Source of the DNA: Vicugna vicugna
Taxonomy: Eukaryota
DNA: 64,000 nt
Direction of reading: 5' to 3'
NCBI GenBank assembly: GCA_013265495.1
Contig: MU063895.1
Coordinates: forward strand, 9,379,774 to 9,443,773
Shown here: in pieces, positions 14,031 through 47,200 of the stretch
Position numbering within the stretch: the stretch's first letter is position 1
How the letters are laid out: each line of letters starts with the position of its first letter
Position numbers and translations under genes: made by a program
Notes under the pieces: generated by a model
Databases searched by the model: none
Told to the model about the DNA's origin: nothing
The model's input: only the letters and a program-made list of their open reading frames with translations

Positions 14031-14164
14031 AGAAAAATGTTAGTTTTCCTTTCTTCTTAATCAATATGCATCCTTTACCTTTTATTAGTTTCACTTAATG
14101 TTTGCCTTTTTGCATTAAAAACAAAAAAATCTTACTTATTTGTTAGTAAGATAATTTCAAAAAT

Positions 14165-14962
14165 TTTTAAATTGAAGTATAGTTGATTTAAAATGGTGTG
14201 CTAGTTTCATGTGTACAGCAAAGTGAATCAGATATACATATATATGTATACATATATATACTTTTTCAGATCCTTTTTCATTACAGGTTACTACCAGCCA
14301 TTGAATATAGTTCCCTGTGCTATACAGTAGGTCTCTGTTGTTTATCTATTTTATATATAATAATGTGTATCTGTTAATCCCAAACTCCTAATTTACCCCT
14401 CTACCACCACTTTCCCCTTTGTTAACCTTAAGCTTGTTTCCTATGTCTGTGAGTCTATTTCTGTTTTGTAAATAAGTTCATTTGTATCATTTTTTTTACA
14501 TTCCACATATAAGTGATATTATATGATATTTGTCTTTCTCTTTCTGACTTACTTNNNNNNNNNNNNNNNNNNNNNNNNNNNNNNNNNNNNNNNNNNNNNN
14601 NNNNNNNNNNNNNNNNNNNNNNNNNNNNNNNNNNNNNNNNNNNNNNNNNNNNNNNNNNNNNNNNNNNNNNNNNNNNNNNNNNNNNNNNNNNNNNNNNNNN
14701 NNNNNNNNNNTGTAGAGTGCTGCTATGAACACTGGGGTGCATGTGTCTTTTTGAATTAGAGCTTCTTCCAGATATGTGACCAGGGGTGGGATTGCTGGAT
14801 CATATGGTAAGTCTATTTTTAGTCTTTTGAGGAATCTCCATACTGTTTTCCATAGTGTCTGCACCAATTTACACTCCCACCAAAAATGCAAGAGAGTTCC
14901 CATTCTCCATACCCTTTCCAGCAATTATTATCTGTAGGCTTTTTGATAATGGCCATTCTGAT
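14165..14962 (-). mobile_element. LINE-1 3' end including the ORF2 C-terminal remnant
   Basis: ORF 14496-14924 (-) reads [36 protein letters not shown], the L1 ORF2 C-terminal cysteine-rich region; 3'UTR ends aaattgaagtatagttgattta. Confidence 0.95.
14555..14710. other. Assembly gap (156 N) inside the L1
   Basis: Run of N from 14555 to 14710. Confidence 1.
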
Positions 14963-18479: not shown

Positions 18480-19680
18480 CCTCGCTCTTTAAACATGGTT
18501 CGCTTGAACTTCAGAGCAATATTCTGCTGATTGTAATTTCTCATATTTCTTTTTAAGCTCGTCTCCTTCCGTCTCTTCCTAGGCACACTGCAGTCCTTCT
18601 CCTTACTCTGATCTTTCTGCTCAAATTTCCTTACTGGAAGATCTTAACCACTTTTATGATTTTAACAACCATCTATAGGTGAGAAATTCCAAATTGTTAT
18701 CTAGCTTTGACGTCTCTCCGAGTTTCAGAATTATAAACCTAAATATCTGTTTGACTCTCCTTAGACAGTTATACTCATTATGATATTCAAGATGTATACA
18801 ATTAGACAGATGATCATCTATCCACATATCACCACTTTCCCACACACAGTATGTTACCTCCGGCTGTAGAAGCCTCTCATTCAATATCACACTCTTTCTA
18901 GATAATGCTTCCAAATTATATCTGTTAGCCATGCTAGTCTGAGTTATTTCTAAAATCCTCCCTTCCTTTGTTTCCCTTTAATCATGGGCTTAGTTGACTC
19001 CTTCACTTTTAGCCCAGGAAAAAAACTGTAAAATCTTCTTATCTTTACTATCACCTTCATCTTAAACAAATATCTAGTCATATTGCCCATTATTGACTGA
19101 TTAATTAATCAATTCAGAAAATATCTGCTAGCTTATTAATATATACCAGGCACTGTTGAGTGTGTTGAGATTACAACAGTGAAAAGAGAAAGAGACGATT
19201 GCCTTACCCCCGCTGAATTTTTGTTATGGGAAAGTGATGAGAAGGAATTTATAAAACCTAATTGAACAAGAAAATGATAATAAAATTACTAATGTTGATA
19301 AATGGTGTTCATGAAGGAAACAGACAAGAGGCTTAGACTGAAAGTGAAAGAACGCCAAAGAAATCTGAGATTTCAAGGGATACCTTTCAGAGGAAGTGAC
19401 ATATAAACCCGCAGCAAAACACGAGAAAGAGCTAGCCATGGGAAGTGTGTGTGTGTGTGAAGTGGGGCTTCGCTGTGGTGGTGCCGGACATTCCAAGGAG
19501 AGGAAACAGGATATGCAAAGAACCCTGGTGTAGAAGAGCTTGGCATGGTCAAGGAATAAAGAAAAAGAAAAAGAAAAAGAAAAAGAAAAAGAAAAAGAAA
19601 AAGCTACCACTGGGGCTAAGACACAATGAATAATGGTTAGAGTGATGGCAGTCAAGAATAGAAAAAGACAAAAGCCAAAC
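18480..19680. mobile_element. Adjacent L2 fragments in opposite orientations
   Basis: Pyrimidine-rich L2 sense segment to about 19090, then antisense L2 (taccaggcactgttgag...gagattacaacagtg). Confidence 0.6.
19561..19602 (+). repeat. (GAAAAA)7 hexanucleotide microsatellite
   Basis: Seven perfect units counted. Confidence 0.98.
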
Positions 19681-25329: not shown

Positions 25330-26222
25330 GTTAATGTATCTCAAATGGAACTCTGTATAGCCCCTCTTTCCCTCCACTCATTCCTCATATCCACAGATCC
25401 TACCAATATCCACCCAGGCGCTCAACCCAAACCAGGAAATGACTCTTGGTTTCTCTTTCTGTATAGCCCCGCCTTCCCCTCAGCATCTGGCCTGTTAAGT
25501 CTGTTTTCCATCGACTCACTTCCCTCCATCTGTGTCATGTGCCCTTGTTCATATCATTAGTGTCTCTGATCCAGATTACTGGTTAGTCTCTTGACCAACA
25601 GGCCTCCTAACAGGCCTCCCTCTTCTCCACACTCCATTCTATATTCCAGTAGCTAAAGTCATCTTATTTAAAATATCTATTAGACCATGTCATTGGCCTA
25701 ACACTCCCTAATGCTTTTATGTTGGGTTAAAATCAAAATCTAAACTGTCTACCAGGGTCTTCTCAGGCCCTATGAGACCAGGTCTCTCCCTGTCTCTTCA
25801 GTGTCACCAGAGAACATTTTACGTGGTCTCCATACTTCACCAACATTGGTCATGTTGGTCCTCTCAAGCATGTCAGCTTACTTTGCTTCCGAGTCTTTGG
25901 TCTTGCTCTTACCTTGGCCCTTCTCTCAAACATGTTCACTGCTGCTTCTTTCTGGTCATTCCGGTCTCAGGTCAGATGTCACTTCCTCAAGGACCTTCTC
26001 TGTTCCCCTTGTAGTAAGTTTCCAACTCCCAACCCAGTTACTCCATCGCAGCATCCCATTTTATTTCAAAGAGCCTGTTTGCCTGAACATTTATTTTTAA
26101 TTTTTTTTTTTGCTTACTTGTTTAGAGCTCTATTTCCTGTTTTAACACCTGAGCTTTACTATCGTACCCTTTAGAACTGTACTCAGACAAAATAAGTGTT
26201 CAATAAATATATGATTGAATAA
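25330..26222 (+). mobile_element. L2 long 3' fragment
   Basis: ccagattactggttagtctc...gatgtcacttcctcaaggaccttctctg...aagtgttcaataaatatatgattgaat. Confidence 0.85.
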
Positions 26223-27729
26223 GGTTACCTGACTCCATAGAAGCAAACACTTTTTTGATGTATTATCTTATAAAGCTTAATACCTAATTGCTGAGTTACC
26301 TTTAGACATTAAAGTCATCTTATAAGGTTTATTTTTATACATTCTGAGGTTTATCTTTTCAAAATTCTTTTTTTTTCTGACTTGAAATCCTCAGTGGATA
26401 TAGCAATGTAAGTTTCCTTTCATGGGTCTTTTTTACTTTAATTGTCTTTATCAGTCTTCCACAGTGTACTCTTTATTGTTGCACCAGTTAATCTATTGTC
26501 ACCGATCTACGTGCACATCTACATGTAATACATCTACATTTCAGCGCATGTATGTGCTGGCATTTCCTGCTCAATGATCATTTCTTCAATAATTTTTACA
26601 AGCCCTGGATCTGACCTCTAGTATATAATAGAAAATGTTCTCAGAAATACTTACATTTTATTCTGTGCCCAGTTATTTGGTATGAAGTTAACCTGACAAT
26701 TGTGACGAGAAGAAAAGCATGTATCAACAAATCTCAATTTGTGTCACGAGATTCTCCTGCCCCCATGAGGTTTCATCGACCTCCTGGAAGGCGTTCTGGC
26801 TGTCAATCCTCAGAACACTCTCTGATAGTTGGGTGTCTGACCTGTGGTGCTTTTTATTTTAGAAGTCTGAAAATCTTACATCCATGCCAGTATTCTAGGT
26901 ATATGTAATGCTAGCTATTGTTTGTGACATAGATCAAATGAACTTCAAAATGTGTGGAATGGCAACAAAGCCTGGTAAGCACCCAGTGCTCACCATAACT
27001 AAGAAGCCCAGGGAAGTCGAGTATTGGGTTGGATGTACAGTGAAACCCAGTCTCCCCAAATACGACGTTGTAAACATTATGAATGCACACACGTCTGCCT
27101 CCATAAATCTCTCCTGTTTTCAGAGTCATGAAACCAGATGCTGTTTTTCAGTGGTCGTTTTTTAAAATTATTATACTGACACCTTACAACCAGGTATGAT
27201 CTCAGTCATCTCCTAGACAAGCTTAGACACAGTGGGTTAAATGGACAGTGTTTCAGCCTTTCTTTTAAATCCCAATCTATTCTGCTTTATATTTAAAATA
27301 CTTCAAACAGTTTTATAATACAACTTCTCTTCTCTCTCCCTAAAAACTGTCTAACCATAAGAATCAATTGGCTGTCTTACTGAAGTTCCTCAAAGCAGTG
27401 GATGGACACAGAGATGCGTCATTCATGGATTCATTATACTTTTATTAAATGCTTACAGTTTTTTTTTTTTCCAACCATGGGCTTACTTATGAGCTTCCTA
27501 ATTCCCATAGTGGGCCAGAGAGATATGCCACCTACTCTGAGAAAATAGTGGTTGATGGAGATGGTAATCCCTTGACCTGCTGAGCATTATGAGAGGAGAA
27601 GGGAAGTAACGTAAGGATTACTGTCCCGTTTGCTGTGGCCTTGTAATAGACTCAGTGCCAGCCAGATAATTTTCAGATTGTGGAATTCTGGTGGCAATCT
27701 GATTATATGATGAGGATGAAAGTGTCAAA

Positions 27730-27970
27730 AATAATTCTATGGCAGTTCACAGCTTAAATACTCCTCTCATACATGCATATACATTTAATCTTTATAACAA
27801 CATTCTCAGGTAGATATCATTACTATCCCCGCTAAGTTGATGAGAAAGGTTAAACCAAGAGATGTAAATAGATTTATCATCACTCAGTTTGTAAGACAGA
27901 GCCAAGGACTCAGACCCTAGTTTTAGCACCTTAAGTCCTTGGTTTTACAGCTACAGAGTGTATTCTCAGT
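27730..27970 (+). mobile_element. MIR
   Basis: taatctttataacaacattctcaggtagatatcattactatcccc...gagccaaggactcagaccc. Confidence 0.75.
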
Positions 27971-28735
27971 ACACAAAGCACATTAAGTGAATTTTCCTTT
28001 GTCCATTAGCATTTTATTCATCTATCTATGTATCTGTCCATCTGTTTCTGTGTGCACAATTTTATGTAAATATCCTTTGACTATGTGGCTTTCACTGTGT
28101 GATATATACATTTTCTCTATGCGTCAGTTGAAATGGGGAGCAGTATGCAACTCTTGACCGGTTTTTATTTCATAGGAGTTCTCCATTAATTGTCTTATCC
28201 TAACCGATGACCAGAGGGGAGCCAAAATAATATGTAAGAAAGTGTTTAACAGCTCATGTTTTATATATATCCTTAAGACTACACTTTATATACAGTCGTT
28301 TAGAATTTGAAGACCTAGGTGTTTGTTCAGTTTTAGATACAATCTAGATCAGCTTTCAAAATATAGAAGTGTTTGCTTTTCCGTATTTTCCATGGATAAA
28401 AGCTAATAATTTTATTTAACTTTTTTCTTTCCCAAAGACTAGAAAGAGAAATTATAAAATTCAGAAAATTTAACTTTGAGCACTTGTTTTTAATTATTCA
28501 CGTACCATCTTAGTGACTTAACACATATGCAGAGATGTCTGTATTGTTTTGTATTGCATTCCAAGTACCCAGTGCACGTACCTTAGTATAGCACATAGTA
28601 GTAACTAAATAAGTATTTTTAAACCTTCAGTATTTCTGAGATGACAATATGGAAAACTCAAGTCCCATTGTAAAAACCTACGGTAACCTTGTTTTAAGAA
28701 TGACTGATCAGGGCGAAGTTCTAGAAAAACGGAAC

Positions 28736-28827
28736 ACTTAGCATAACCATTTGGGATTGACTGTTCCAGACTTTAAGCTCAACGACATTTCTATTTTTAC
28801 TTACAAAGGACGTGAAATGCCAGTTCT
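28736..28827 (+). repeat. Inverted repeat, left arm (92 bp, unclassified)
   Basis: 88/92 identical to the reverse complement of 33531-33622 by manual alignment. Confidence 0.97.
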
Positions 28828-30299
28828 ATTCTAATTCCAGCCAAGTTGAAAGTTTACTCCACATAAATTGGTGCAGAAAAAGTGCGACCTGAAAGTATCA
28901 GTGGTCTCAGCGTTGATTCCAACTTGGATGCTAAGAGAACACAGTGCGTAGAATATAAAAAACTGCTTTTCATTTCTCTTTAACTGAAAATAGGTGAGAT
29001 GAAATTTAGACTGTTTTTCCTTGAAATAAAGTCCATATTTCTCTCTGCCCTGGACCCACTACACTTACCTCAGTCACCCAAAGGGAAATTTAAATATCAA
29101 AGGATACTGGTGGAATGGACATGATTTCCTTTTAAAGGGCAGTCTGCACTTCTTGTAGCAAACATATTATTTGTAAATCCTTTTCCTCCAGGAAAGAGAC
29201 TTTTCAACTTCTATTGCAATTTCTGATTCTATGAATCAGAATCCCATCAAAAGGAACCAGTAAAGAATATAGATTTATAGGTTAATTATTTTCTTAGATA
29301 TGGGGGGGGGCTACAACCTTCGTTTTCTTTGTCTAATGACGAGGAATTACAAAATCCCATGACCCCAGGCAGACGCGGGCTAATTTGCAGTGTGGGGACT
29401 GGAGAGAAGATGACAGCTGCAGACAGTGTGGAAGGAGAACCACCTTGCAACATGTTTTGTCAAGTTGCAGCCTCTAGCTTTGACCTAGGGCCAGTATTCC
29501 CGGAGACATGATGAAGTGTGAAAAGTACTGGCAGGCATTTTAGCCTGGAAAAAAAAAAAGTTCGGAGGGAAGGGAAAACGGGGATCAGGAGAGATTAATA
29601 TTTGTGAGGTTTATAGCAGAAAAGGCAAAGCAATAGGAAGTAGAGGAATCTCTGCAGGGAATTTCTTACAACAGCAGCAGATTAGAAACAGGATGGGCTG
29701 GAGCAGGAAGCTTATTTTTCCAGCTGGAGCCTTCCCGACAAACCTGAGGTCGATTTGGGAACGACAGGCAAATGCCAAGCCAATGCGAAACCAAGAAATG
29801 ATGATAGAATTTACAGGCCCTGGGAAAGTCTGGGGGCTGGGAAGAAAGAAGGAAAGAGGGAGAGAGGAGGAGAGAGCAGGGGAGTTGCGAAGAGGGGAAG
29901 GACTGAACTCCAGCAGAAGGCACTGGCATTCTGAACCTGGAACATTTTAGTTACAGAGCAGAAGAACATTCCTGCTAGTGAATGCAGATTTTCAAGCTAG
30001 AAGAGTCTGAGGTGACCTAATCTAGACGTTTTCAAGTTTTACAGCCACAGGAAATAAACTTCAAACAAATTCATATGCAGAATCCCCATGTGGCTACAGA
30101 ATTGCTGATCTGGTTTAGGAGGAAGGGGCAAGCTTGGACTTGCATGCACTGGCCTCAACGCATGCCTGAAAATTGACTCCTGGGGCCCTCAGAGAATCTT
30201 TAAGGCTTTTCAGAATATTTGGAAATGAACCTGGTCTGACCTACACCTTCATACATTAAGGAAACAGGATCTAAGGTCTTAGGGCTTGCAAGTATATTT

Positions 30300-30960
30300 T
30301 GAGAGTCTACGTGCTGTGAGGCTCTGTCCCTGTTTCCTGATGCCCTGCGTTCTGAACTTTCAGGATCCCTCTGCTGGGAATACAGGCCCTTGAACCTCCC
30401 TCATCACATTGCGGGTAATTGCTACCCACAGTCCTTCGGGATGGACATGACAATAGACTGATGAACTCCGCTGTCACTCTGAGAAACACGGAGGATGATC
30501 CTTCTCCTGAAAGCTGGCACTTTCACTGGAATGATGAACAAGGCAGAGGGTAGAACATAAGGCCTCCTTTGCCTGCAACGCCATCTGCTCCCCTTGGTGC
30601 CTTCTGCCATAGCTGGAGTTTTCCAAGAGTTTTCCTCCACTTCTGCAGCTTGTAATGACTCCTTTAATGATAATTTCCAGCCACCGCCTTGTCCCTGTCA
30701 GCTTTCAGCAGTGGCAGGCTCTACTGGCATTAACTTTGCTTCAGGTGTTCAGGTTAGTGGCTTCGACTGGCTACTCTGGTAGGAAAATAGCATCCCAGCA
30801 TCTCTCTGTACCCAGCAAAGAAAAATTCTCCCATTCTGGGTACCACCCCTGCCGTATCTTTCTTAGAAACACTTCTGTGAAACCTTTTGGCCATAGCTAC
30901 CTTGCTGCACAACTCTTTGAATGTCTGATTTCAGATATCCATCCAGTTTCAGTGGGAAAC
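30300..30960. other. GC-richer unclassified segment, possibly an ancient LTR
   Basis: Composition differs from its flanks; all frames are interrupted; family not recognised. Confidence 0.3.
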
Positions 30961-31799
30961 CATATCTTTGTGTGTACACATGTTGTTAATGTTTATGTTA
31001 CTTTTTTCTTTTTAACTTTGCCTTGAAATGAATTCTGACCTTATTGGTAGAAGCATTGGTTAAGCATGTGTCTTCTGCTTTCTAAAGATGTGATCTTAGG
31101 AAAACCATAAAGTTTCAGAAAAATCTCATTGATTCAAAGGGAGATAAATCCTAATGACCTCCAGCATTACTGGAAGCCATAAATAAAGTCAAACGAATGT
31201 GAAATTGTTTTCAAAATTTTAAACTATTAAGTGAATATACAGGATTGTATAATCAAAATTGCAATAGCATCGATCTGTTTCCTCTGCCTTGAATGTCTAC
31301 CTCTTAAGAATCTCACTGTAACTTAAACCCATTTCTTGAGGGTTCTTGAGGGAGGGTATTCAACTTGAATCTAGTTTAGCCATATCTAAATTTAGACAAC
31401 AGGGGACTTGGCAAAACCTCCCAATTCCTCTTCACATACCTCCCGTGTACATGGAGGCAATTATTTTAAAATATTGAGTAATGAAAATGGTTCCCTAGGT
31501 ATCGCATAATTTCCTATATAAAAGATACTCAAGTACACAATGTGGGGGAACTTAAGACAACCTCATGTCTTTTTATCAGTGAATGGAATCAAGCAATCTG
31601 AATTGAATGTTTTCAGCGTTTAGTTATCTATTTGTCTATTAGGAATTTGTATTGATTACTGCACTGACAAACTCATATTTAATTTTTGTGCTGTATTTTG
31701 TTATAAAATAAAAATATACACACATCCTTAAATTTGAAATAAATAAGTATTTAGCATTAAGTATGCCCTCTGTAATATTTGTAACCCTGTTTGCCTTTT

Positions 31800-32620
31800 C
31801 TCTGTTCCACCTCTCTTCAAAATAGTGTCTCTCTCTGCCTTTCAGTGGCTTAAGCCAGGTTTCAATTCTTCATACCTTGACTCCTTCCTCTTACGTTGTA
31901 TCAATCATGGAAGACTCCTGATTCTATCTCCTGAATGTATTTTACGTTTATCTATTTCTTTCCATCCCCACTGGCATTTCTCTATTAGAGGCACTGTTAC
32001 CTCTGACGTTGAATTAGTTTTCCTGTCTCCGGGTTCCCCCTCCACCTCACCCCCACCCCCACCCCCGTCACCCTCTGGCAATCTAAGTGCCATCTAAATG
32101 CAAATTTAGTTATGTAAAACAGAAAGCAAGCTCCATGAGATCAGGACTTGTGTCTTTCTTTCTTACCTCCACATCCCTAGTGACATAGACTGATTTATTA
32201 ATTCGACAAACATTTATTGAGTGTCGACTATCTGTTAAATAATGTTCTAAGCATTGGAAATTCAGTACAGAAGACGACGGACAATGGCTTTGCCCCAAAG
32301 AACCTTACATTTCAGTGAAGGAAGACAGACGCAAACACACAGAAGTAAACAAACAAGAAAGCATAAGGTAGCGATAAGTGCTATGACACAAATAAACTTG
32401 CGGTGCTGCAAACAGTGGCCAAGGGGCTGCTTTAGGTAAGGTAGGTCGGGGAAGCTCCTCGAGGGAAGTGAATGAATGACTGTCTCTCTCCTCCTTATAA
32501 TTTTTCCGTGGGTCATCATTGTCCTTGTTAGATAGGTAAGCTCATGATATTTCAGGTTCTTATCTCTCATTTTGCAAGGCTAATCTTCAGCCACTTTTGA
32601 GCAGGAAATGTAATATTGCC
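31800..32620. mobile_element. L2 fragments (sense, then antisense from about 32187)
   Basis: aagctccatgagatcaggac (L2 3') followed by attcgacaaacatttattgagtg...aagcattggaaattcag (L2 antisense tail). Confidence 0.75.
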
Positions 32621-32642
32621 AGTTGAATCTGAGTTCCTCTTA

Positions 32643-32832
32643 CATCGTGGTTCTCACACTTCAGCTGACATTAGAATCACAGGGAGGGTTTGTTAGAACA
32701 CAGATGCCAGGCTCCGTCGTGAGGGTTTCTGATTCACTGGATCTGGGATGGGGTTGGAGAAAGTGCATATTTAACCCGTTGTTCCCAGGTGATACCAGTG
32801 GTGTTGGTCCAGGGTCCGCTTTCAGAACGCTC
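32643..32832. mobile_element. MER5A hAT-Charlie MITE
   Basis: gtggttctcacacttcagctgacattagaatcacagggagggtttgttagaacacagatgcc...ttcccaggtgata...ctttcagaac. Confidence 0.88.
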
Positions 32833-33150
32833 ACACAACTACTTCCCATCTTCTTTCACGCCCTTTTGACCTGTCTGCAGAGTTTCACCCTCCTGCCCCC
32901 ACTCCTCTGCATTTCTTGCATAATTGTCTTTTACTGATTTTTCATGTCTCAGTATATTTTTTATCTCCTCTAAGAACATTTCCCAAATATCCACTTTCCC
33001 TCTCTCTTAGGTGCTTCATAGTCATGCTGTATCCTGTTTCTATCACATTATATTGTGGTTTCCTATTCCCTCGTTTGTATATCTCATGCATAATTCCTTG
33101 ACTGTATTTTTCACTGGTGTATCTTTAGTGCCTAGAACAGTGCCTGGCAC
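32833..33150 (+). mobile_element. L2 3' fragment
   Basis: Ends ctttagtgcctagaacagtgcctggcaca. Confidence 0.7.
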
Positions 33151-33530
33151 ATTTTCAATCCTTTCTATTCAAGAAAGATCAGTGCTCTGATGATTGCTAG
33201 CCTGGTCAAATGATTTCCTGCAAATCATTCAGAAATGTAAGTACAGAAAATAATTAATATGATAAAAACATGGTGACATATCTAATAACTGACAGATTAG
33301 TTTTTAAAAGAATAAAGATCGTGAATGAATGAATAATTTACATTAAAATTATGATTTCTGAATTAACTTTCAAGAAAATAATCCTTCTGCATCTTTTTTC
33401 CATCTCACCTTGAAAAAAAAAATGGCGAAGTGTTTTTTTTTTTAATGATAGAAAATACCAAGGGGATAAAGATAGTGTTGTATTTACTCTAAATTTGGGT
33501 AGATTGAAATAAGATATTCAAAGTATTCAA

Positions 33531-33622
33531 AGAACTGGCATTTCACTTCCTTTGTAAGTAAAAACAGAAATGTCGTTGAGCTTAAAGTCTGGAACAGTCA
33601 ATCCTAAATGATTATGCTAAGT
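33531..33622 (-). repeat. Inverted repeat, right arm (92 bp, unclassified)
   Basis: Reverse complement of 28736-28827 with 4 substitutions; abuts a tandem tattcaaag x2 (33515-33532). Confidence 0.97.
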
Positions 33623-34624
33623 ATTTTTTTTCTAAACAAATGCCGTAATGTTTCTTTTACCTTATTTTAAAAGTTGTTTTCTTCCATGTATTTTACATTC
33701 TGAAAAATGGGATTCTGAGAAAACAAATGTAGTTACCAAAGGAATATTATTATTGATCAGTTGAAGAATAAGGCCCCTTGAGGCTTTTGAGAGCTGTTTT
33801 GTTAGATGGGAAAATATACTATAAGAAAAAAAATGAAATTGTACATTAGTCAATCAGGCCAATGTTAATTAAATTGGTGTGAATTGTATCAACAATTCAA
33901 TCTTGTGTATCACTTAATCACAAAGAAGAATAACAAACAATATGGATAGTGTGAAGCAAATTTGAGATAAGAAATCTTCCAGACCATCCAATTACTCATG
34001 TTCTCAATTTTCTTTGCCATAAATGATAGCACATGCACTGTCATGGTCTAAGTTAATGAGAAACCAGGGACTAACATAGATCATTGCTAAAACTGAGCTT
34101 GCCAGTAGGGGAAATCAAAGTGGAAGACAGGAAGAGGAAAGGTTAGCTTTTAAAGAGGAAAAATTGCTACTCAGAGATGATGTGCATTTAGTAGAGCATA
34201 AAATGAATTTGATCTGAGTTGGGAATTCGAAACATAAGAGCTTTAAGGGATTGCTAAAATCCCAGTGCCTGCATTTAAGAAATCTATTTTCCACCTTGGA
34301 GATTTAGAAAATAAAAACTACATGTCAGTAGAGGACTGGGGATGGGGCTTTTTGGCTTCTGGAAAGTCTTGAATGAGTCACTTAGTGTCATATGAAAAAT
34401 AGGTGTTATTCCTACAAAATCCATCATGCTATAAAAGCAAAGTACTGCGAAGGACCGTTAAAAGTCAGCCTAAGCGTCCCCCAGTCTGCATCCATGCCAA
34501 TTTGAAAATTATTCCAGGCCGTTTTTATAAGGCCTTAATAAACATTTCTTCATTTTGCTAATAATCTGGGACAGGACTTAACAGTTTTCACCATCAGAAA
34601 ATTCGCTCTTATATATTATTTAAA

Positions 34625-34730
34625 TCCCTTCTATTTGGGTTCCTTCCTTCCTTCTATCCTTCCTTCCTTCATCTTTCTTTCTTTTTTTCTTCCTTTCTTT
34701 CTCTTTTTCTTTCTCTCTTTCCCTTTTTCA
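34625..34730. repeat. Polypyrimidine low-complexity tract (TTCC/TTTC-rich)
   Basis: Direct reading. Confidence 0.85.
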
Positions 34731-35899
34731 ATTCAATCTTCCATAAAGGTGGAAAATGGCTGGTCATCATGAATGGTATGTGTGTTCATCTTTTATATAA
34801 TTGGTAAATCTGTTATTCAACAATCTCAGTTGTTCTTTCATAAGATCTAATTTTTTCTTACCTAGATACGAGTTGCTTTTCTCTACTATACTTACATTGT
34901 GTCAAAGCTTCTGTTTATTCTTTATGTTTTGAGTTACTGAAGTAAAGCAAGAAACGTTTTTCATACAGAATTTGATCAGTTGTTAAAATAATGTGAGCAT
35001 CTCAACTATCTTTCACTTTTAATATCTAAGTAATATAACCAGTGTTGAAAAATTAGGAAAACAGAGAAGAAACAAACAAAAAAGTCACCCCAAATCCCAC
35101 TGCTCAGTGGTTACAATTATAAATATTTTGCTGTATTTTTAGACTGTTTCCTATCTAAATTACTTATGTTTTGCATAATATATCATGATCGTTTTGCCAT
35201 ATTAATGAAAGTGTACCTTAGAAATTGTGTTACGTGTTGCAGAATTATTTTTCAAGTTGATCTGAGTAGGAAAGCAGACATATGAACATACCAGCAACTA
35301 GATTACAACACACAAAGAACTATAATAACGATATGGTAAAATATTAGTGTAAAAAAGCAGGACTTTTTTTTGACATAATAACAAATAGTGAAGACTCCAT
35401 ATGATATCACTGTAGTGACTACTGGAAGATGAATAGAGTTTCCTTTAACGGAAAATGGAAGACACTAAATACAGAAAAAAAAATCATGGGTAGGCACTAA
35501 AGTTTAAGAAAATTGTGTGTTTGGATAGAGCAGCTGGTATAAGGAATGCACAGGCTCATGAGTCAAGCTTTCAACAAGGGATCTATTTTTCCTTTCTCAC
35601 CTTTACTTCTATGCATGGTTTAAAAAGTACAGCCCAGATCTTCCATGGTCAAGCTAGGGTTAGAACTCAGAAGATAAGTTTAGTCTCTTCCTCTCACACA
35701 TGAGGAGCTGTAAGACTGTTTGTGGACATGAAGTTAATAGGGCGCTGTCGCAGAAGACAATGAGAGGTAAAGTTAACTTTTACAATTATTTAATTTTTTG
35801 TTTATGGACTAAGTTCAAAGAACACTTAAATTATAGAAACAGTATTTTGATTCCAGGCAAAATACTTATTATTTATGCACGTGGGCTGATAAAAATACT

Positions 35900-36232
35900 G
35901 AAATTCAGAGGAAGGTGGGTCAAAAGGCACAGGCTTCCAATTGTAAGTAAGTACTAGGGACGTCACGTGCAATGTGATGCCTGTAGTTAACACTGATGCC
36001 TGATGTATAGGAAAGTTATTAAGAGAGCAGATCCTAAGAGTTCTTACCACAAGGGGAAATTTTTTTCTTTTCTCTTTATCTATATGAGATGATGGATGCT
36101 AACTAAAACTTGATCATGGCAATCATTTCACAGTATGTGTAACTCAAACCCTCATACTGGATAACTTACATGTATACCTGAAACTTATAAATGTATTCAG
36201 TATGTCAATTATTTCTCCTTAAAACTGGAAAG
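35900..36232 (+). mobile_element. L1MA/MC-type 3' UTR fragment
   Basis: gggtcaaaaggcacaggcttcc...gatcctaagagttcttaccacaag...ggcaatcatttcacagtatgtg. Confidence 0.85.
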
Positions 36233-36599
36233 AAATGCTGAAATTATGTGAGCTTCCAGGGCCTGACCCCTTAAATAAGTTAATAGTAAGGACTATTTAT
36301 ATGAGACTATAAAAATTACAATGTACCTGGTGACATTATTAGGAATTCCACTTGGACTCACTAATTCCATATGTGTTAGGTGTCAAGATTGTCTCTTCTT
36401 TCTCCCATCCTCACACACTGTGTCCAGGTATTGTACCCAACCATCCAGGAATTTACAAGCGTCCATGATATGGTATAAAGGGTTTTAGTAGGTTTTGCTT
36501 TTCACAAAATACTTGGACAAAATCATTGATAAGTTATCTAAATATTTTTTTAATTTGGACAATTTCATAAGGGCTAATCCATCTAGGAATTCTGAATTA

Positions 36600-40362: not shown

Positions 40363-40864
40363 CGGATGGCTGGATAAAGAAGCTGTGGTATATTTATCCA
40401 ATGGAATACTACTCAGCCATTACAAAGAATAAAATAATGCCATTTGCAGTAACATGGATGGACCTAAGATCATCATAGTAAGTGAAGTAAGTCATAAAGA
40501 GAAAGAAAAATATCAAATGGTATCACTTATGTGTGGGATCTAAAAAAGAGACGAACTTACTCACAAAACAGAAACAGACTCACAGACATAGAAAACAAAC
40601 TTCTAGTTATAGTGAGAAGGGGAAGGGAGGGTGGAGGGATACATTAGGAGTTCAGAATTTGCAGATATTAACTACTACATATAAAGTACATAAACAAAAA
40701 GTTTCTTCTGTAGAGCACAGGAAACTATATTCACTATCTTGTAGTAACCTATATTGAAAAAGAATATGAAAAGGAATATATGTATGTGTATGCATGACTG
40801 GGACATTGTGCTGTACACCAGAGAGTGACATTGTTAACTGACTATACTTCAATTTAAAAAAAAA
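40363..40864 (+). mobile_element. Artiodactyl/camelid LINE-1 3' end
   Basis: tggataaagaagctgtggtatat...atggaatactactcagcc...ctgtacaccagagagtgacattgttaactgactatacttcaatt plus poly-A. Confidence 0.93.
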
Positions 40865-42278
40865 AGACAATGATTCCAACAATAACAAATAGAGATAGAT
40901 GATGGATCTATACATAGATTGTGTGTATATAAAATTTGAATTTTAAAATTTATAAGTATACATGAAAATAATCCATCATTTCAAACTCTGCATTTCACAT
41001 CATGACCAGAGCATGCCCTTTCCCACCTCGCTCCTCCACACGCATTACCACTATGGCATACTTCTCATTTGGTGCTGATTGAATTCTTGTCACACAGTTA
41101 AGACATTTATCGTTTCCAGGCTTCCGATGAGTAAGCTGAAATTCAGAGAGTTTAGAAAATTAAAGTCCAGTCTCTCAGTAAATGGTAAACTTAGGCTTCC
41201 CATCTGGGTTTTTTTAGGTTTGTGTTCACCATTCTTTTACTCCATCCAATTTGGAGAAAAGTATGTTTGCTTAAAAACATGTATTTTCATTTTCAACCCA
41301 GTGTTTATAATAAAGTGATGGTTGTGGAGGATGGAGAAAGGAATATATTGTGGTAGGTAGAGGATTAGTCTGCAAAGATATTTAACATTTTTGAAGGTTG
41401 GAGTTGAAGACGAATGAGCATATACAGCTCATTTTCTAGGTAAGGTGTTCACGGGTTTGAAGAGGGTGCCAAAAGAGGAAATTAGGAAATAGAATTTTAA
41501 GAACCTTCACCAGAGCATCAAACAACTCAGAGCTCATGGTTTTGATGCCCAAAGGAATAAGAATGTAAACAAAGCAGCAGACAAACTAAATGAGATAAGC
41601 GAAGGCTGCGAGTGGTTGCAACTATAATACAATGCTGCGTGTGTGCACGTGGACAGATCCTTAAACTTACCGGGAAATGAAAATCAAGATAAGACTATCA
41701 TTTGCATATTTTATTTGCCACTTTGGGCTCCATATAGTCTTTGTTGAAATTACTTCTAAATATATATAGTGAGATACCCACATTGCATGTCTGTCATTTT
41801 GGGGTACAGAAATTCGCCTGAACTTGTTTTAGGAAGAGTGAAAATAGGTTCTAAGTCACTTTATTTCATTCAAACAACGTTGAAATTAAAAAAAAAAGTT
41901 TAAATTCACTGCTTAGGGAAAATCACATCATTTTAAAACACAGAGGCTAATAAGTGATAGAAACTAGTGGCTATCTCCTGGTTGGGTCATTTACATCTGA
42001 AGAAGAGCTGTGACAGAAATTTCCAAGAGTTTCATGTTGAAAATTACAATTGGGAGAAAATGGTTTTCACAAAAATAAAGAGCGAAAAAAAAAAAAAAGA
42101 AAAGGTAAAAATAACATGATGTTTCTACTCACTAGGCAGTCCTGTTGGGTCCCCTTCAGGGTGTAAATCTGATCGCCAGTCTTCCCCTAATGGTTTTGAA
42201 ATGGAGCTGTTGAAAGCTGTGTTCAGCAAGCACCCTTTTACCCTCACTACTCATTCTGTTTTCTTCTTCTCTCTGCAG

Positions 42279-46099: not shown

Positions 46100-46170
46100 T
46101 TTTTTTTTTTTTTTAATGGAGGTACTAGGGATTGAACCCAGGGCCTCATGCATGCTAAGCACACACTCCA
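46100..46170 (-). mobile_element. 5'-truncated camelid tRNA-derived SINE (Vic-1-like)
   Basis: Poly-T, then aatggaggtactagggattgaacccagggcctcatgcatgctaagcacac, the reverse complement of the SINE B-box region. Confidence 0.9.
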
Positions 46171-46385: not shown

Positions 46386-47038
46386 AGATTTTTTTTTCCA
46401 TTTCTCTTTTGGGTAACAACCACACAAAGCTTAGTTCACATACTGTCTTCCTTACACAATCTCCTCAAACCACACATAGTGGAAAGTAATATAACAAATA
46501 TTGTTGAATCTGTATGTCGTAGATATTGTGCCATGAACTTTCACCTTCTTGTGAATGATCACATTTCAAAGCAACCAAAGAAGTTAAATACTGTTTTCTT
46601 TCTCCTTCTCCTTCCTCTTCATCTTCCTCCCTTTCTTCTCCTTCCCTTCCCCTTCTCTTTCTTCTTCTTCTTCCTCCTCTTGAGCCAAATTATCCCCAGA
46701 GAAATTAATCTCCTCAATTAAATTTGCAAAGAGCAACACAGGGTTAGAATTGCTTTGGACACAAAAATATCTAACTTTAAATTCCTGCTTTCCCCATTTC
46801 TTTGCATTCTCTCTACCTTCTGAAAATTTCTATCCCAACTTTAGATTTTTCCATATCATGTAATGAAATTATTGTGTTTTATATACCTCCTAACCATTTG
46901 CCTGTATATCTTAAGTTTTGTTTTTAAGGGAAAAATCTGATTTTCTCAGTATCCTTTCATATGCTCTCAATAGGTACTGGATAAGTAATCATGCATCATC
47001 TTGAAAGTCATGTTATAAAAATGTTTAGAAGTCACCCA

Positions 47039-47200
47039 GGGGGCAGGGTATAGCTCAGGTGGTAGAGTGCATGCTTAACATGTATGAGATCCTGGGTTCA
47101 ATCCCCAGTACTTCCTCTAAAAATAAATAAACTTAATTACCCCCCCAAGTAAAATAATTAAATAATACAATAATAAATAAACAAAATATTGAAAAAAAAA
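47039..47200 (+). mobile_element. Full-length camelid tRNA-derived SINE (Vic-1-like)
   Basis: GGGGGcagggtatagctcaggtggtagagtgcatgcttaacatgtatgagatcctgggttcaatcccc; A-box about 47051-47062, B-box 47095-47105, A-rich tail. Confidence 0.93.

What the first reader, a model, noticed from the sequence alone, without database searches (positions are those of the whole stretch)
28736..33622. Unclassified 92-bp inverted repeat (96% identical) bracketing 4.7 kb of ancient repeats
Seen: 28736-28827 and the reverse complement of 33531-33622 match at 88/92 with no gaps and a 39-bp perfect core. Differences lie at 28747, 28753, 28793 and 28811. Similarity falls off sharply outside the arms, with only weak outer resemblance (tagaaaaa). 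The 4703-bp spacer is mostly old L2, MIR, MER5A and L1M relics. The arm matches no TE family I know, and such identity exceeds that expected between copies of an ancient repeat. Inferred explanations: (1) an inversion made by staggered breaks that left inverted duplications; (2) an old inverted duplication homogenised by gene conversion, prone to recurrent polymorphic flipping; (3) a selected long-range RNA duplex (splicing loop-out, circRNA or ADAR site; on a + strand transcript it would contain one G-U pair and an A-C mismatch at 28793).
Basis: partly seen in the sequence, partly recalled or inferred. Interest (0 to 1): 0.75.

Follow-up and report, generated by a model that had tools for sequence, protein, structure and literature searches.

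The report
Small local inverted duplication, repair scar
A stretch of about 105 bases has been copied once, in reverse orientation, 4.7 kb away in non-coding mammalian DNA; it looks like an ordinary, fairly recent scar of faulty DNA replication or repair, and nothing shows it to be a mobile element or a functional RNA structure.

Summary
Arms 28736-28827 and 33531-33622 match at 88/92 with a 39-bp perfect core. With two small gaps the match runs 28718/28722-28827 against 33531-33637 (about 106 bp, 92.5%, E 6e-38). It is the only pair in the 64-kb window with at least 84% identity over 30 bp.

- **Sharp edges.** Flanks of 150 to 1000 bp show no residual similarity, so this is not the conserved or converted core of an older long repeat.
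- **No element features.** The arms do not fold on their own and match no Rfam family. They have no poly(A), no terminal inverted repeats of their own, and no duplication flanking the whole 4.9-kb unit. The spacer shows no transposase or reverse-transcriptase remnant.
- **Junction scars.** The left arm is flanked by a perfect 7-bp direct repeat, AGTTCTA, that overlaps the donor's end. A perfect 9-bp tandem duplication abuts the inner edge of the right arm.

Best reading: one neutral, microhomology-mediated event roughly 4-55 Myr ago (point estimate 10-20). Most likely it was a 105-bp inverted templated insertion at the left site. Alternatively it was a 4.8-kb inversion that duplicated one flank. 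No outgroup sequence could be reached to decide between them. Gene conversion and selected-duplex readings have no support. Earlier notes of this scan list similar 100-120-bp inverted duplications elsewhere in this genome; I did not check them.

The parts
28717..28723 (+). First copy of the heptamer AGTTCTA, at the outer edge of the left arm. I read it as the target-site copy and as microhomology with the donor's start (GTT-TA).
   Evidence: AGTTCTA occurs 11 times in the window (13.6 expected), two of them here, 105 bp apart.
28722..28827 (+). Left arm. Under Model I the inserted copy is 28724-28828 (105 bp).
   Evidence: 92.5% gapped and 95-96% ungapped identity to the reverse complement of the right arm.
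28822..28828 (+). Second copy of AGTTCTA. Its first 6 nt lie inside the arm homology and the 7th (A, 28828) lies outside it. TTCTA is also repeated in tandem at 28824-28833.
   Evidence: A flanking direct repeat of 7 nt or more has a null frequency of 0.024 per arm with generous zones.
28829..33514 (.). Spacer of non-coding sequence, in places GC-richer. It holds no protein-domain remnant, Rfam family or repeat shared with the rest of the window.
33515..33532 (+). Perfect tandem duplication TATTCAAAG x2. Its last two bases are the first two bases of the right arm. Possible junction scar.
   Evidence: Only 9 such perfect tandem duplications (period 8-15) occur in 64 kb. The chance that one ends within 2 nt of any of the four arm boundaries is about 0.006.
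33531..33634 (-). Right arm: the donor under Model I, the native copy next to the right flank under Model II. The gapped alignment runs on to 33637.
   Evidence: Its best flanking direct repeat is only 4 nt.

Best explanation
The pair is the scar of a single, selectively neutral error of DNA replication or break repair. That event copied about 105 bp in reverse-complement orientation within the same 5-kb neighbourhood. It is neither a mobile element nor a selected structure.

Most likely sub-model (Model I, inferred): the left site originally read ...GGGCGA-AGTTCTA-TTCTAATTCC.... A free 3' end there paired through microhomology with the right-hand locus, whose segment starts GTT-TA and ends AGTTCT. 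It copied about 100 nt of the opposite strand and then returned to its own template at the same heptamer. That left the insert 28724-28828 flanked by a 7-bp duplication, AGTTCTA. This is a microhomology-mediated template switch of the FoSTeS/MMBIR type, or templated patch repair at a staggered break.

The five substitutions and two small indels since then (about 4-5% divergence) put the event roughly 10-20 Myr ago. The Poisson range is about 4-55 Myr, assuming 1.2-2.2e-9 substitutions per site per year.

If the region is transcribed, a stable 95-106-bp RNA duplex would form as a by-product.

I put about 0.8 on 'a one-off local rearrangement of either geometry' and about 0.5 on Model I specifically.
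For: - Exactly two copies lie 4.7 kb apart, and they are the only high-identity pair in 64 kb.
- Both edges are sharp, with no residual flank similarity.
- The same about 106-bp unit is present in both copies.
- A perfect 7-bp direct repeat, AGTTCTA, flanks the left arm. It overlaps the donor's terminal AGTTCT, and the donor's start GTT-TA resembles it too. The right arm's best flanking repeat is only 4 nt.
- No poly(A), no terminal inverted repeats within the unit and no Rfam family.
- The arms have no structure of their own (z -0.01 to +1.2).
- The 29 longest open stretches in the spacer and by the arms carry no transposase or RT domain.
- The differences are 4 transitions and 1 transversion, scattered along the arm, as expected for neutral drift.
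- Such events are a described mutation class: PMC5453318, PMC7954356 and PMC8421209 for template switches and templated insertions, and PMC5338099 for interspersed duplications in human germlines.
Against: - No outgroup or second genome could be reached, so the ancestral state is inferred, not seen.
- The 7-bp flanking repeat is only moderately unlikely by chance (0.024 per arm), and 6 of its 7 bases are equally explained by Model II.
- The 9-bp tandem duplication abutting the right arm (p about 0.006) suggests that the right-inner edge is itself a junction. Model I leaves that as coincidence or as a stalling site.
- In the four-point survey of short template switches, returns upstream of the leaving point, which would make a target duplication, were not observed (PMC5453318).
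- Copy number in the rest of the genome is unknown.
Confidence: 0.5

Rival explanations
1. Model II: a 4.8-kb inversion that duplicated one flank (a dupINV/INVdup-type event, made by staggered breaks or two template switches). The ancestor read A-B...C-x-D. The block B...C-x was copied or rejoined in reverse while x also stayed next to D. The novel junctions are then left-outer (28717-28723) and right-inner (33530/33531), each using the AGTTCT / GTT-TA microhomology.
For: - The geometry is what staggered-break or CNV-flanked inversions predict: inverted duplicates at the two ends of the inverted block (PMC1885836, PMC5338099; type 1-3-4-2 of PMC5453318 at small scale).
- The perfect 9-bp tandem duplication lies at the predicted right-inner junction (p about 0.006).
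- The end of flank A, AGTTCT, equals the end of x' over 6 nt, so that junction would be seamless.
Against: - The 7th base of the flanking repeat (A at 28828) must then be chance.
- The event requires copying or rejoining 4.8 kb rather than 0.1 kb.
- Base-skew profiles give no sign that the spacer is flipped relative to its surroundings, though the window has almost no strand asymmetry, so that test has no power.
- The orientation of the spacer cannot be checked without an outgroup.
Confidence: 0.27
2. Two independent copies of an uncharacterised short interspersed repeat, or fragments of a young lineage-specific element, that happen to lie 4.7 kb apart in opposite orientation.
For: - Genome-wide copy number could not be measured.
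- Both copies have the same extent, as copies of a short complete element would.
- The left copy has a 7-bp flanking repeat, like a target-site duplication.
Against: - There is no third copy in 64 kb.
- There is no poly(A) tail, no terminal inverted repeats within the unit, and no tRNA, 7SL or other Rfam similarity.
- The right copy has no target duplication.
- The 'target duplication' at the left overlaps the homologous sequence itself by 6 nt, which is not expected of an independent insertion.
- Two copies within 5 kb would be likely only for a family of about 1e5 copies. That would be a major known repeat and should recur in the window.
Confidence: 0.08
3. The arms are the terminal inverted repeats of one 4.9-kb DNA transposon.
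For: Inverted arms of about 100 bp bracket a few kilobases.
Against: - No target-site duplication flanks the whole unit: the outer flanks read ...GGCGAAGTTC and AAATGCCG....
- No transposase-like domain occurs in any open stretch of 55 aa or more of the interior.
- The arm ends do not resemble the termini of any superfamily that I know; this point is from memory and was not tested.
- There is no other copy in the window.
Confidence: 0.03
4. An inverted repeat maintained by selection or gene conversion. It would act as a long-range pre-mRNA duplex (ADAR substrate, exon looping or back-splicing aid) or as a substrate for recurrent flipping of the spacer.
For: The two arms would pair very stably as RNA: -155 kcal/mol on a + transcript and -162 on a - transcript, where 3 of the 5 differences become G-U.
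Against: - There is no halo of older similarity around the arms.
- There are no compensatory changes; 4 of 5 differences (+ transcript) or 2 of 5 (- transcript) break pairs.
- No exon, Pfam domain or Rfam family was found in the loop.
- There is no CpG island or other sign of a gene in the window, and transcription is unknown.
- The arms are short, with a 39-bp longest perfect run. From general knowledge that is below the lengths at which mammalian ectopic recombination is efficient.
Confidence: 0.05
5. An assembly artefact, for example a chimeric or fold-back read built into the consensus.
For: Short inverted duplications are a known error class of long-read assemblies (general knowledge). 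The scan's notes list many about 100-bp inverted duplications in this genome, but these are unchecked.
Against: The copies differ by 5 substitutions and 2 indels and lie 4.7 kb apart. An artefactual duplicate of the same molecule should be near-identical and usually adjacent.
Confidence: 0.03

Closest known systems
Replication-based template-switch / MMBIR templated insertions (four-point model; PMC5453318, PMC7954356, PMC8421209)
   Same: A reverse-complement copy of nearby sequence with the donor retained, microhomology at the switch points (AGTTCT, 6 nt; GTT-TA), and creation of a new inverted repeat.
   Different: The events catalogued in great apes are mostly tens of bases long and are copied from within tens to hundreds of bases. 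Here about 105 bp were copied from 4.7 kb away. The apparent 7-bp target duplication corresponds to a return upstream of the leaving point, which that survey did not observe.
CNV-flanked inversions and inverted interspersed duplications of human germline SV catalogues (dupINV/INVdup, iDUP; PMC5338099), and staggered-break inversions in Drosophila (PMC1885836)
   Same: Inverted duplicates sit at the two ends of a block of a few kilobases and derive from sequence that was single-copy before the event.
   Different: Inversion of the block is not shown here. The duplicated piece is only about 105 bp. Those catalogues describe polymorphic or de novo variants, whereas this is an aged copy (about 4-5% diverged) that I take to be fixed.
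Templated sequence insertion polymorphisms (TSIPs; PMC5110952)
   Same: A short stretch templated from elsewhere in the genome is inserted at a break. Class 1 has a target-site duplication of 5 bp or more, and class 2 has microhomology at the junctions.
   Different: There is no poly(A) tract, no cryptic polyadenylation signal and no TTTT/A target, so it is not class 1. It does have a target duplication, so it is not a typical class 2. The donor is local and inverted rather than distant, and nothing points to an RNA intermediate.
Inverted-repeat SINE pairs (such as inverted Alu pairs) as sources of intronic dsRNA
   Same: If transcribed, the arms would make a long, nearly perfect intramolecular duplex of the kind that ADAR edits (general knowledge).
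   Different: The arms are not mobile-element copies. Transcription and editing are untested, and the loop is long (4.7 kb).

Membership tests
Inverted templated insertion by template switch (FoSTeS/MMBIR-like) | The inserted segment matches a nearby donor in reverse-complement orientation, and the donor is retained | tested here: met
   106 nt, 92.5% gapped and 95-96% ungapped identity, with both copies present.
Inverted templated insertion by template switch (FoSTeS/MMBIR-like) | Microhomology between recipient and donor at both junctions | tested here: inconclusive
   the recipient heptamer AGTTCTA matches the donor end AGTTCT (6 nt) and the donor start GTT-TA (5 of 6 with one gap). The ancestral recipient sequence is inferred from the flanking repeat, not observed. 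Chance level is 0.024.
Inverted templated insertion by template switch (FoSTeS/MMBIR-like) | Empty site in the ancestor or outgroup | not testable with these tools
   No mammalian sequence is within reach. The metagenome scan gave only chance 22-mers. Genome contigs and viral contigs gave 0 hits. The protein routes were empty.
Inversion with flanking inverted duplication (staggered breaks / dupINV-INVdup) | Inverted duplicates at the two ends of the block | tested here: met
Inversion with flanking inverted duplication (staggered breaks / dupINV-INVdup) | The block between the duplicates is inverted relative to the ancestral order | not testable with these tools
   There is no outgroup. The strand-skew test has no power (window AT and GC skews are about -0.01). 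No old repeat in the window spans a junction.
L1-mediated templated insertion (class 1 TSIP) / retroposed copy | Target-site duplication of 5 bp or more | tested here: met
   7-bp AGTTCTA around the left arm.
L1-mediated templated insertion (class 1 TSIP) / retroposed copy | Poly(A) tract at the 3' end of the insert and a TTTT/A target (PMC5110952) | tested here: not met
   the insert ends are ...AAATGCC on the top strand and ...CGTTTTTC on the bottom strand, next to the duplication. The target AGTTCTA is not TTTT/A-like.
DNA transposon with terminal inverted repeats | A target-site duplication flanking the whole element, and transposase remnants or further copies | tested here: not met
   The outer flanks are unrelated. 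There is no Pfam hit in 29 open stretches of the interior and no other copy in the window.
SINE / small-RNA-derived repeat or known RNA family | Similarity to tRNA, 7SL, 5S or any Rfam model, and an A-rich tail | tested here: not met
   (no match at E up to 1 in 26000-36500). (the only tRNA-like hit in the window is at 47044-47117). There is no A tail.
Functional long-range RNA duplex (ADAR, circRNA or splicing loop-out) | Able to form a long stable duplex | tested here: met
   -155 and -162 kcal/mol. This follows trivially from the sequence identity.
Functional long-range RNA duplex (ADAR, circRNA or splicing loop-out) | Pairing preserved by compensatory change; transcription; an exon in the loop | tested here: inconclusive
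   There are no compensatory pairs, and 2-4 of the 5 differences break pairing. No exon-like feature was found. Transcription is not testable here.
Gene-conversion-homogenised old inverted duplication | A high-identity tract embedded in longer arms of lower identity | tested here: not met
   flanks of 150-1000 bp on both sides score no better than shuffled sequence.

The most novel reading that the evidence does not exclude
This may be one instance of a recurrent, size-restricted mutation class in this genome: inverted, locally templated insertions of about 100-120 bp with their own short target duplication. The scan's first-stage notes list several look-alikes on other pieces of the same genome: a perfect 104-bp one with a target duplication, a 114-bp one, and a 120-bp pair bracketing 3.6 kb. 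A sharp size mode near 100-120 nt would point to a defined intermediate, such as a displaced lagging-strand fragment or flap, or a fixed synthesis tract of one repair polymerase. It would also be a steady source of new long intronic RNA duplexes in a lineage without Alu-like inverted pairs. None of this was tested here; the other notes are unchecked.
Probability: 0.12. Interest if true: 0.6.

Novelty: new member of a known kind. Interest (0 to 1): 0.22.

Why it matters
On its own this matters little. It is a dated, clean example of a small inverted duplication with readable junctions in a mammalian genome. It shows how a perfect-looking long inverted repeat, and hence a potential dsRNA stem or fragile site, can arise in one step without a mobile element or selection.

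It would matter more if a genome-wide census showed that such 100-120-bp inverted local copies with target duplications are common and size-restricted in this lineage. That would define a mutational signature and a source of new RNA hairpins.

Tried and rejected
- **Orthologues or further copies.** The one metagenome scan, with a 21-mer from the core, returned four marine contigs that share only a 22-mer, which is chance. The viral and prokaryotic genome collections gave 0 hits. Exact look-up of ten nearby ORFs and a homology search with the 123-aa spacer ORF found nothing, so the protein collections do not hold spurious ORFs of this genome or its relatives. The scan's own index by sequence was blank.
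- **Which arm is native.** I tried to decide this from old repeats crossing a junction. blastn with word size 7, and nhmmer with the flanks either native or joined with the arm removed, found nothing elsewhere in the window.
- **Host gene.** There is no Pfam domain in the ten longest open stretches of the window or in the spacer's stretches. The only two hits were sub-threshold (PAZ, E 0.064; CPSase_L_D3, E 0.093) and count as chance. There is no CpG island.
- **Coding reading of the arm.** One reverse frame is open across the left arm but is stopped in the right arm. I read this by eye, and it is consistent with chance.
- **Flanking inverted 7-mer.** GGCATTT/AAATGCC around the right arm has p about 0.06, so I dropped it.
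- **Strand-skew test for an inverted spacer.** It has no power, because the window has almost no skew.
Full report
**Observation**

Left arm 28736-28827 and the reverse complement of 33531-33622 match at 88/92 without gaps. The differences lie at 28747, 28753, 28793 and 28811, the perfect core is 28754-28792 (39 bp), and the spacer is 4703 bp.

The ungapped match extends to 28733-28827 / 33531-33625 (95 nt, one further mismatch at 28735). With two small gaps in the A-rich start it extends to 28718/28722-28827 against 33531-33634/33637 (106 nt, 92.5%, E 6e-38). A 36-mer from the core occurs exactly twice in the window, against none expected.

In a self-comparison of the whole 64 kb, this is the only pair with at least 84% identity over at least 30 bp. 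The other three strong pairs are old L1-like and SINE copies at 70-82%.

**Setting**

The window is AT-rich (about 37% G+C) and CpG-depleted (observed/expected 0.25). It has no CpG island and one run of 156 N at 14555-14710, which I left alone. A tRNA-derived SINE at 47044-47130 and an L1 3' end near 40400-40870 show that it is mammalian.

I found no evidence of a coding exon. The ten longest open stretches of the window and all stretches of 55 aa or more in and beside the spacer have no Pfam match. The only exceptions are two sub-threshold chance hits. Whether the locus is intronic or intergenic remains unknown.

**What the arms are not**

- They match no Rfam family, even at E up to 1.
- Neither arm folds better than shuffled sequence (z -0.01 to +1.2).
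- They have no A-rich tail, no terminal inverted repeats of their own and no tRNA-like part.
- The 4.9-kb unit as a whole has no flanking target duplication, and its interior has no transposase or reverse-transcriptase remnant. Reading the arms as the terminal repeats of a transposon is therefore not supported.
- The flanks of the arms (150, 400 and 1000 bp, inner and outer) are no more similar than shuffles. The arms are therefore not the conserved or converted core of a longer, older inverted duplication. The duplicated unit really is about 106 bp, with sharp edges.

**Junction anatomy**

Two features at the edges look like rearrangement scars.

1. The left arm is flanked by a perfect 7-bp direct repeat, AGTTCTA, at 28717-28723 and 28822-28828. 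Six bases of the second copy lie inside the homology, because the right-arm copy also ends in AGTTCT. The right-arm copy starts with GTT-TA, which resembles the first heptamer. A flanking direct repeat of 7 nt or more occurs at 2.4% of random placements with generous tolerance. The right arm's best flanking repeat is 4 nt.
2. A perfect tandem duplication, TATTCAAAG x2, lies at 33515-33532, and its last two bases are the first two of the right arm. Only nine perfect tandem duplications with a period of 8-15 exist in the window. The chance that one ends within 2 nt of any of the four arm boundaries is about 0.006.

Both probabilities are post hoc and should be read as suggestive only. A third coincidence, the inverted 7-mer GGCATTT/AAATGCC around the right arm, is not significant (p about 0.06).

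**Mechanism**

The same microhomologies fit two histories.

- **Model I.** The left site once read GGGCGA-AGTTCTA-TTCTAATTCC. A 3' end there paired with the right-hand locus through AGTTCT or GTT-TA and copied about 100 nt of the opposite strand. It then returned to its own heptamer, leaving a 105-bp inverted insert (28724-28828) with a 7-bp target duplication. This explains all seven bases of the repeat. It leaves the 9-bp tandem duplication as an unrelated event, or as the place where synthesis stalled.
- **Model II.** A 4.8-kb block, including one copy of the arm, was inverted while the arm was also kept next to the right flank. This is a flank-duplicating inversion. The novel junctions are left-outer and right-inner, so the tandem duplication is a stutter at a junction. 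Six of the seven bases of the repeat are microhomology and the seventh is chance.

Both are described classes. They include short template switches that create inverted repeats with or without an inverted spacer (PMC5453318, PMC7954356) and MMBIR-type templated insertions (PMC8421209). They also include CNV-flanked inversions and interspersed duplications in human germlines (PMC5338099) and staggered-break inversions in Drosophila (PMC1885836).

The L1-mediated class of templated insertions shares the target duplication, but its poly(A) tract and TTTT/A target are absent here (PMC5110952).

I put about 0.5 on Model I, 0.27 on Model II, and about 0.8 on a one-off local rearrangement of either kind.

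**Age and drift**

The copies differ by five substitutions (four transitions and one transversion, scattered along the arm) and two small indels in the A-run. That is about 4-5% divergence.

With 1.2-2.2e-9 substitutions per site per year (general knowledge), the event is about 10-20 Myr old. The Poisson range is roughly 4-55 Myr. No homogenisation is needed to explain the identity.

- **Gene conversion of an old duplication.** This is not supported. There is no lower-identity halo, and arms of about 100 bp with a 39-bp longest perfect run are poor recombination substrates (general knowledge).
- **A selected RNA duplex.** The arms would pair very stably as RNA, at -155 kcal/mol on a + transcript and -162 on a - transcript, but that follows from the identity alone. 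Four of the five differences break pairs on the + transcript (C-A twice, A-C, C-U; one G-U), and two break pairs on the - transcript, where three become G-U. There are no compensatory changes and no exon or RNA family in the loop. Transcription is unknown. If the region is transcribed, the duplex would be a plausible ADAR substrate as a by-product.

**What could not be done**

No mammalian sequence other than the window is within reach of these tools.

- The single metagenome scan returned four marine contigs sharing a chance 22-mer.
- The other collections returned nothing.
- The protein routes were empty.
- Old repeats in the window do not cross any junction.

**Earlier notes of this scan**

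A look-up by words returned first-stage notes on other pieces of the same genome that describe similar things. They include a perfect 104-bp inverted, locally templated insertion with its own target duplication, a 120-bp pair bracketing 3.6 kb, and a 114-bp pair. These are unchecked notes seen as titles only, and they are not independent evidence. They do raise the possibility of a recurrent, size-restricted class, which I give as the novel case.

**Verdict**

It is best explained as an ordinary, neutral scar of replication or repair: a new example of a known kind of mutation. Interest is low unless a genome-wide census shows a recurrent class.

Noticed in passing
window 33515-33532: Perfect 9-bp tandem duplication (TATTCAAAG x2) abutting the inner edge of the right arm. 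It is one of only nine perfect tandem duplications with a period of 8-15 in the window.
   Followed up: yes
window 28824-28833: TTCTA repeated twice in tandem across the inner edge of the left arm, so both inner edges of the arms sit in short tandem repeats. I read this by eye and did not assess its significance.
   Followed up: partly
window 47044-47130 and 46102-46168: A tRNA-derived SINE (ARAGORN calls it tRNA-Val-like) with a truncated inverted partner about 0.9 kb upstream (67 nt, 82%). This is an ordinary SINE-based inverted pair in the same window.
   Followed up: partly
window 14164-14554, 14555-14710 and 40485-40860: An L1-like fragment (74% identical to the inverted copy at 40485-40860) runs straight into the 156-N stretch.
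   Followed up: no
window 28868-28892: The sequence ATTGGTGCAGAAAAAGTGCGACC, about 45 nt inside the left arm's inner edge, faintly recalls a mariner-type terminal repeat. This is from memory only and was not tested.
   Followed up: no
window 34640-34729 and 19551-19602; 46590-46690: Low-complexity pyrimidine-rich tracts: (TTCT)n matching an inverted purine-rich tract at 19.6 kb, and a CT-rich stretch at 46.6 kb.
   Followed up: no
L001-L004 (metagenome contigs): Four marine metagenome contigs, apparently related to one another, all carry the same 22-mer as the arm core. There is no similarity beyond it, so this is a chance match.
   Followed up: yes
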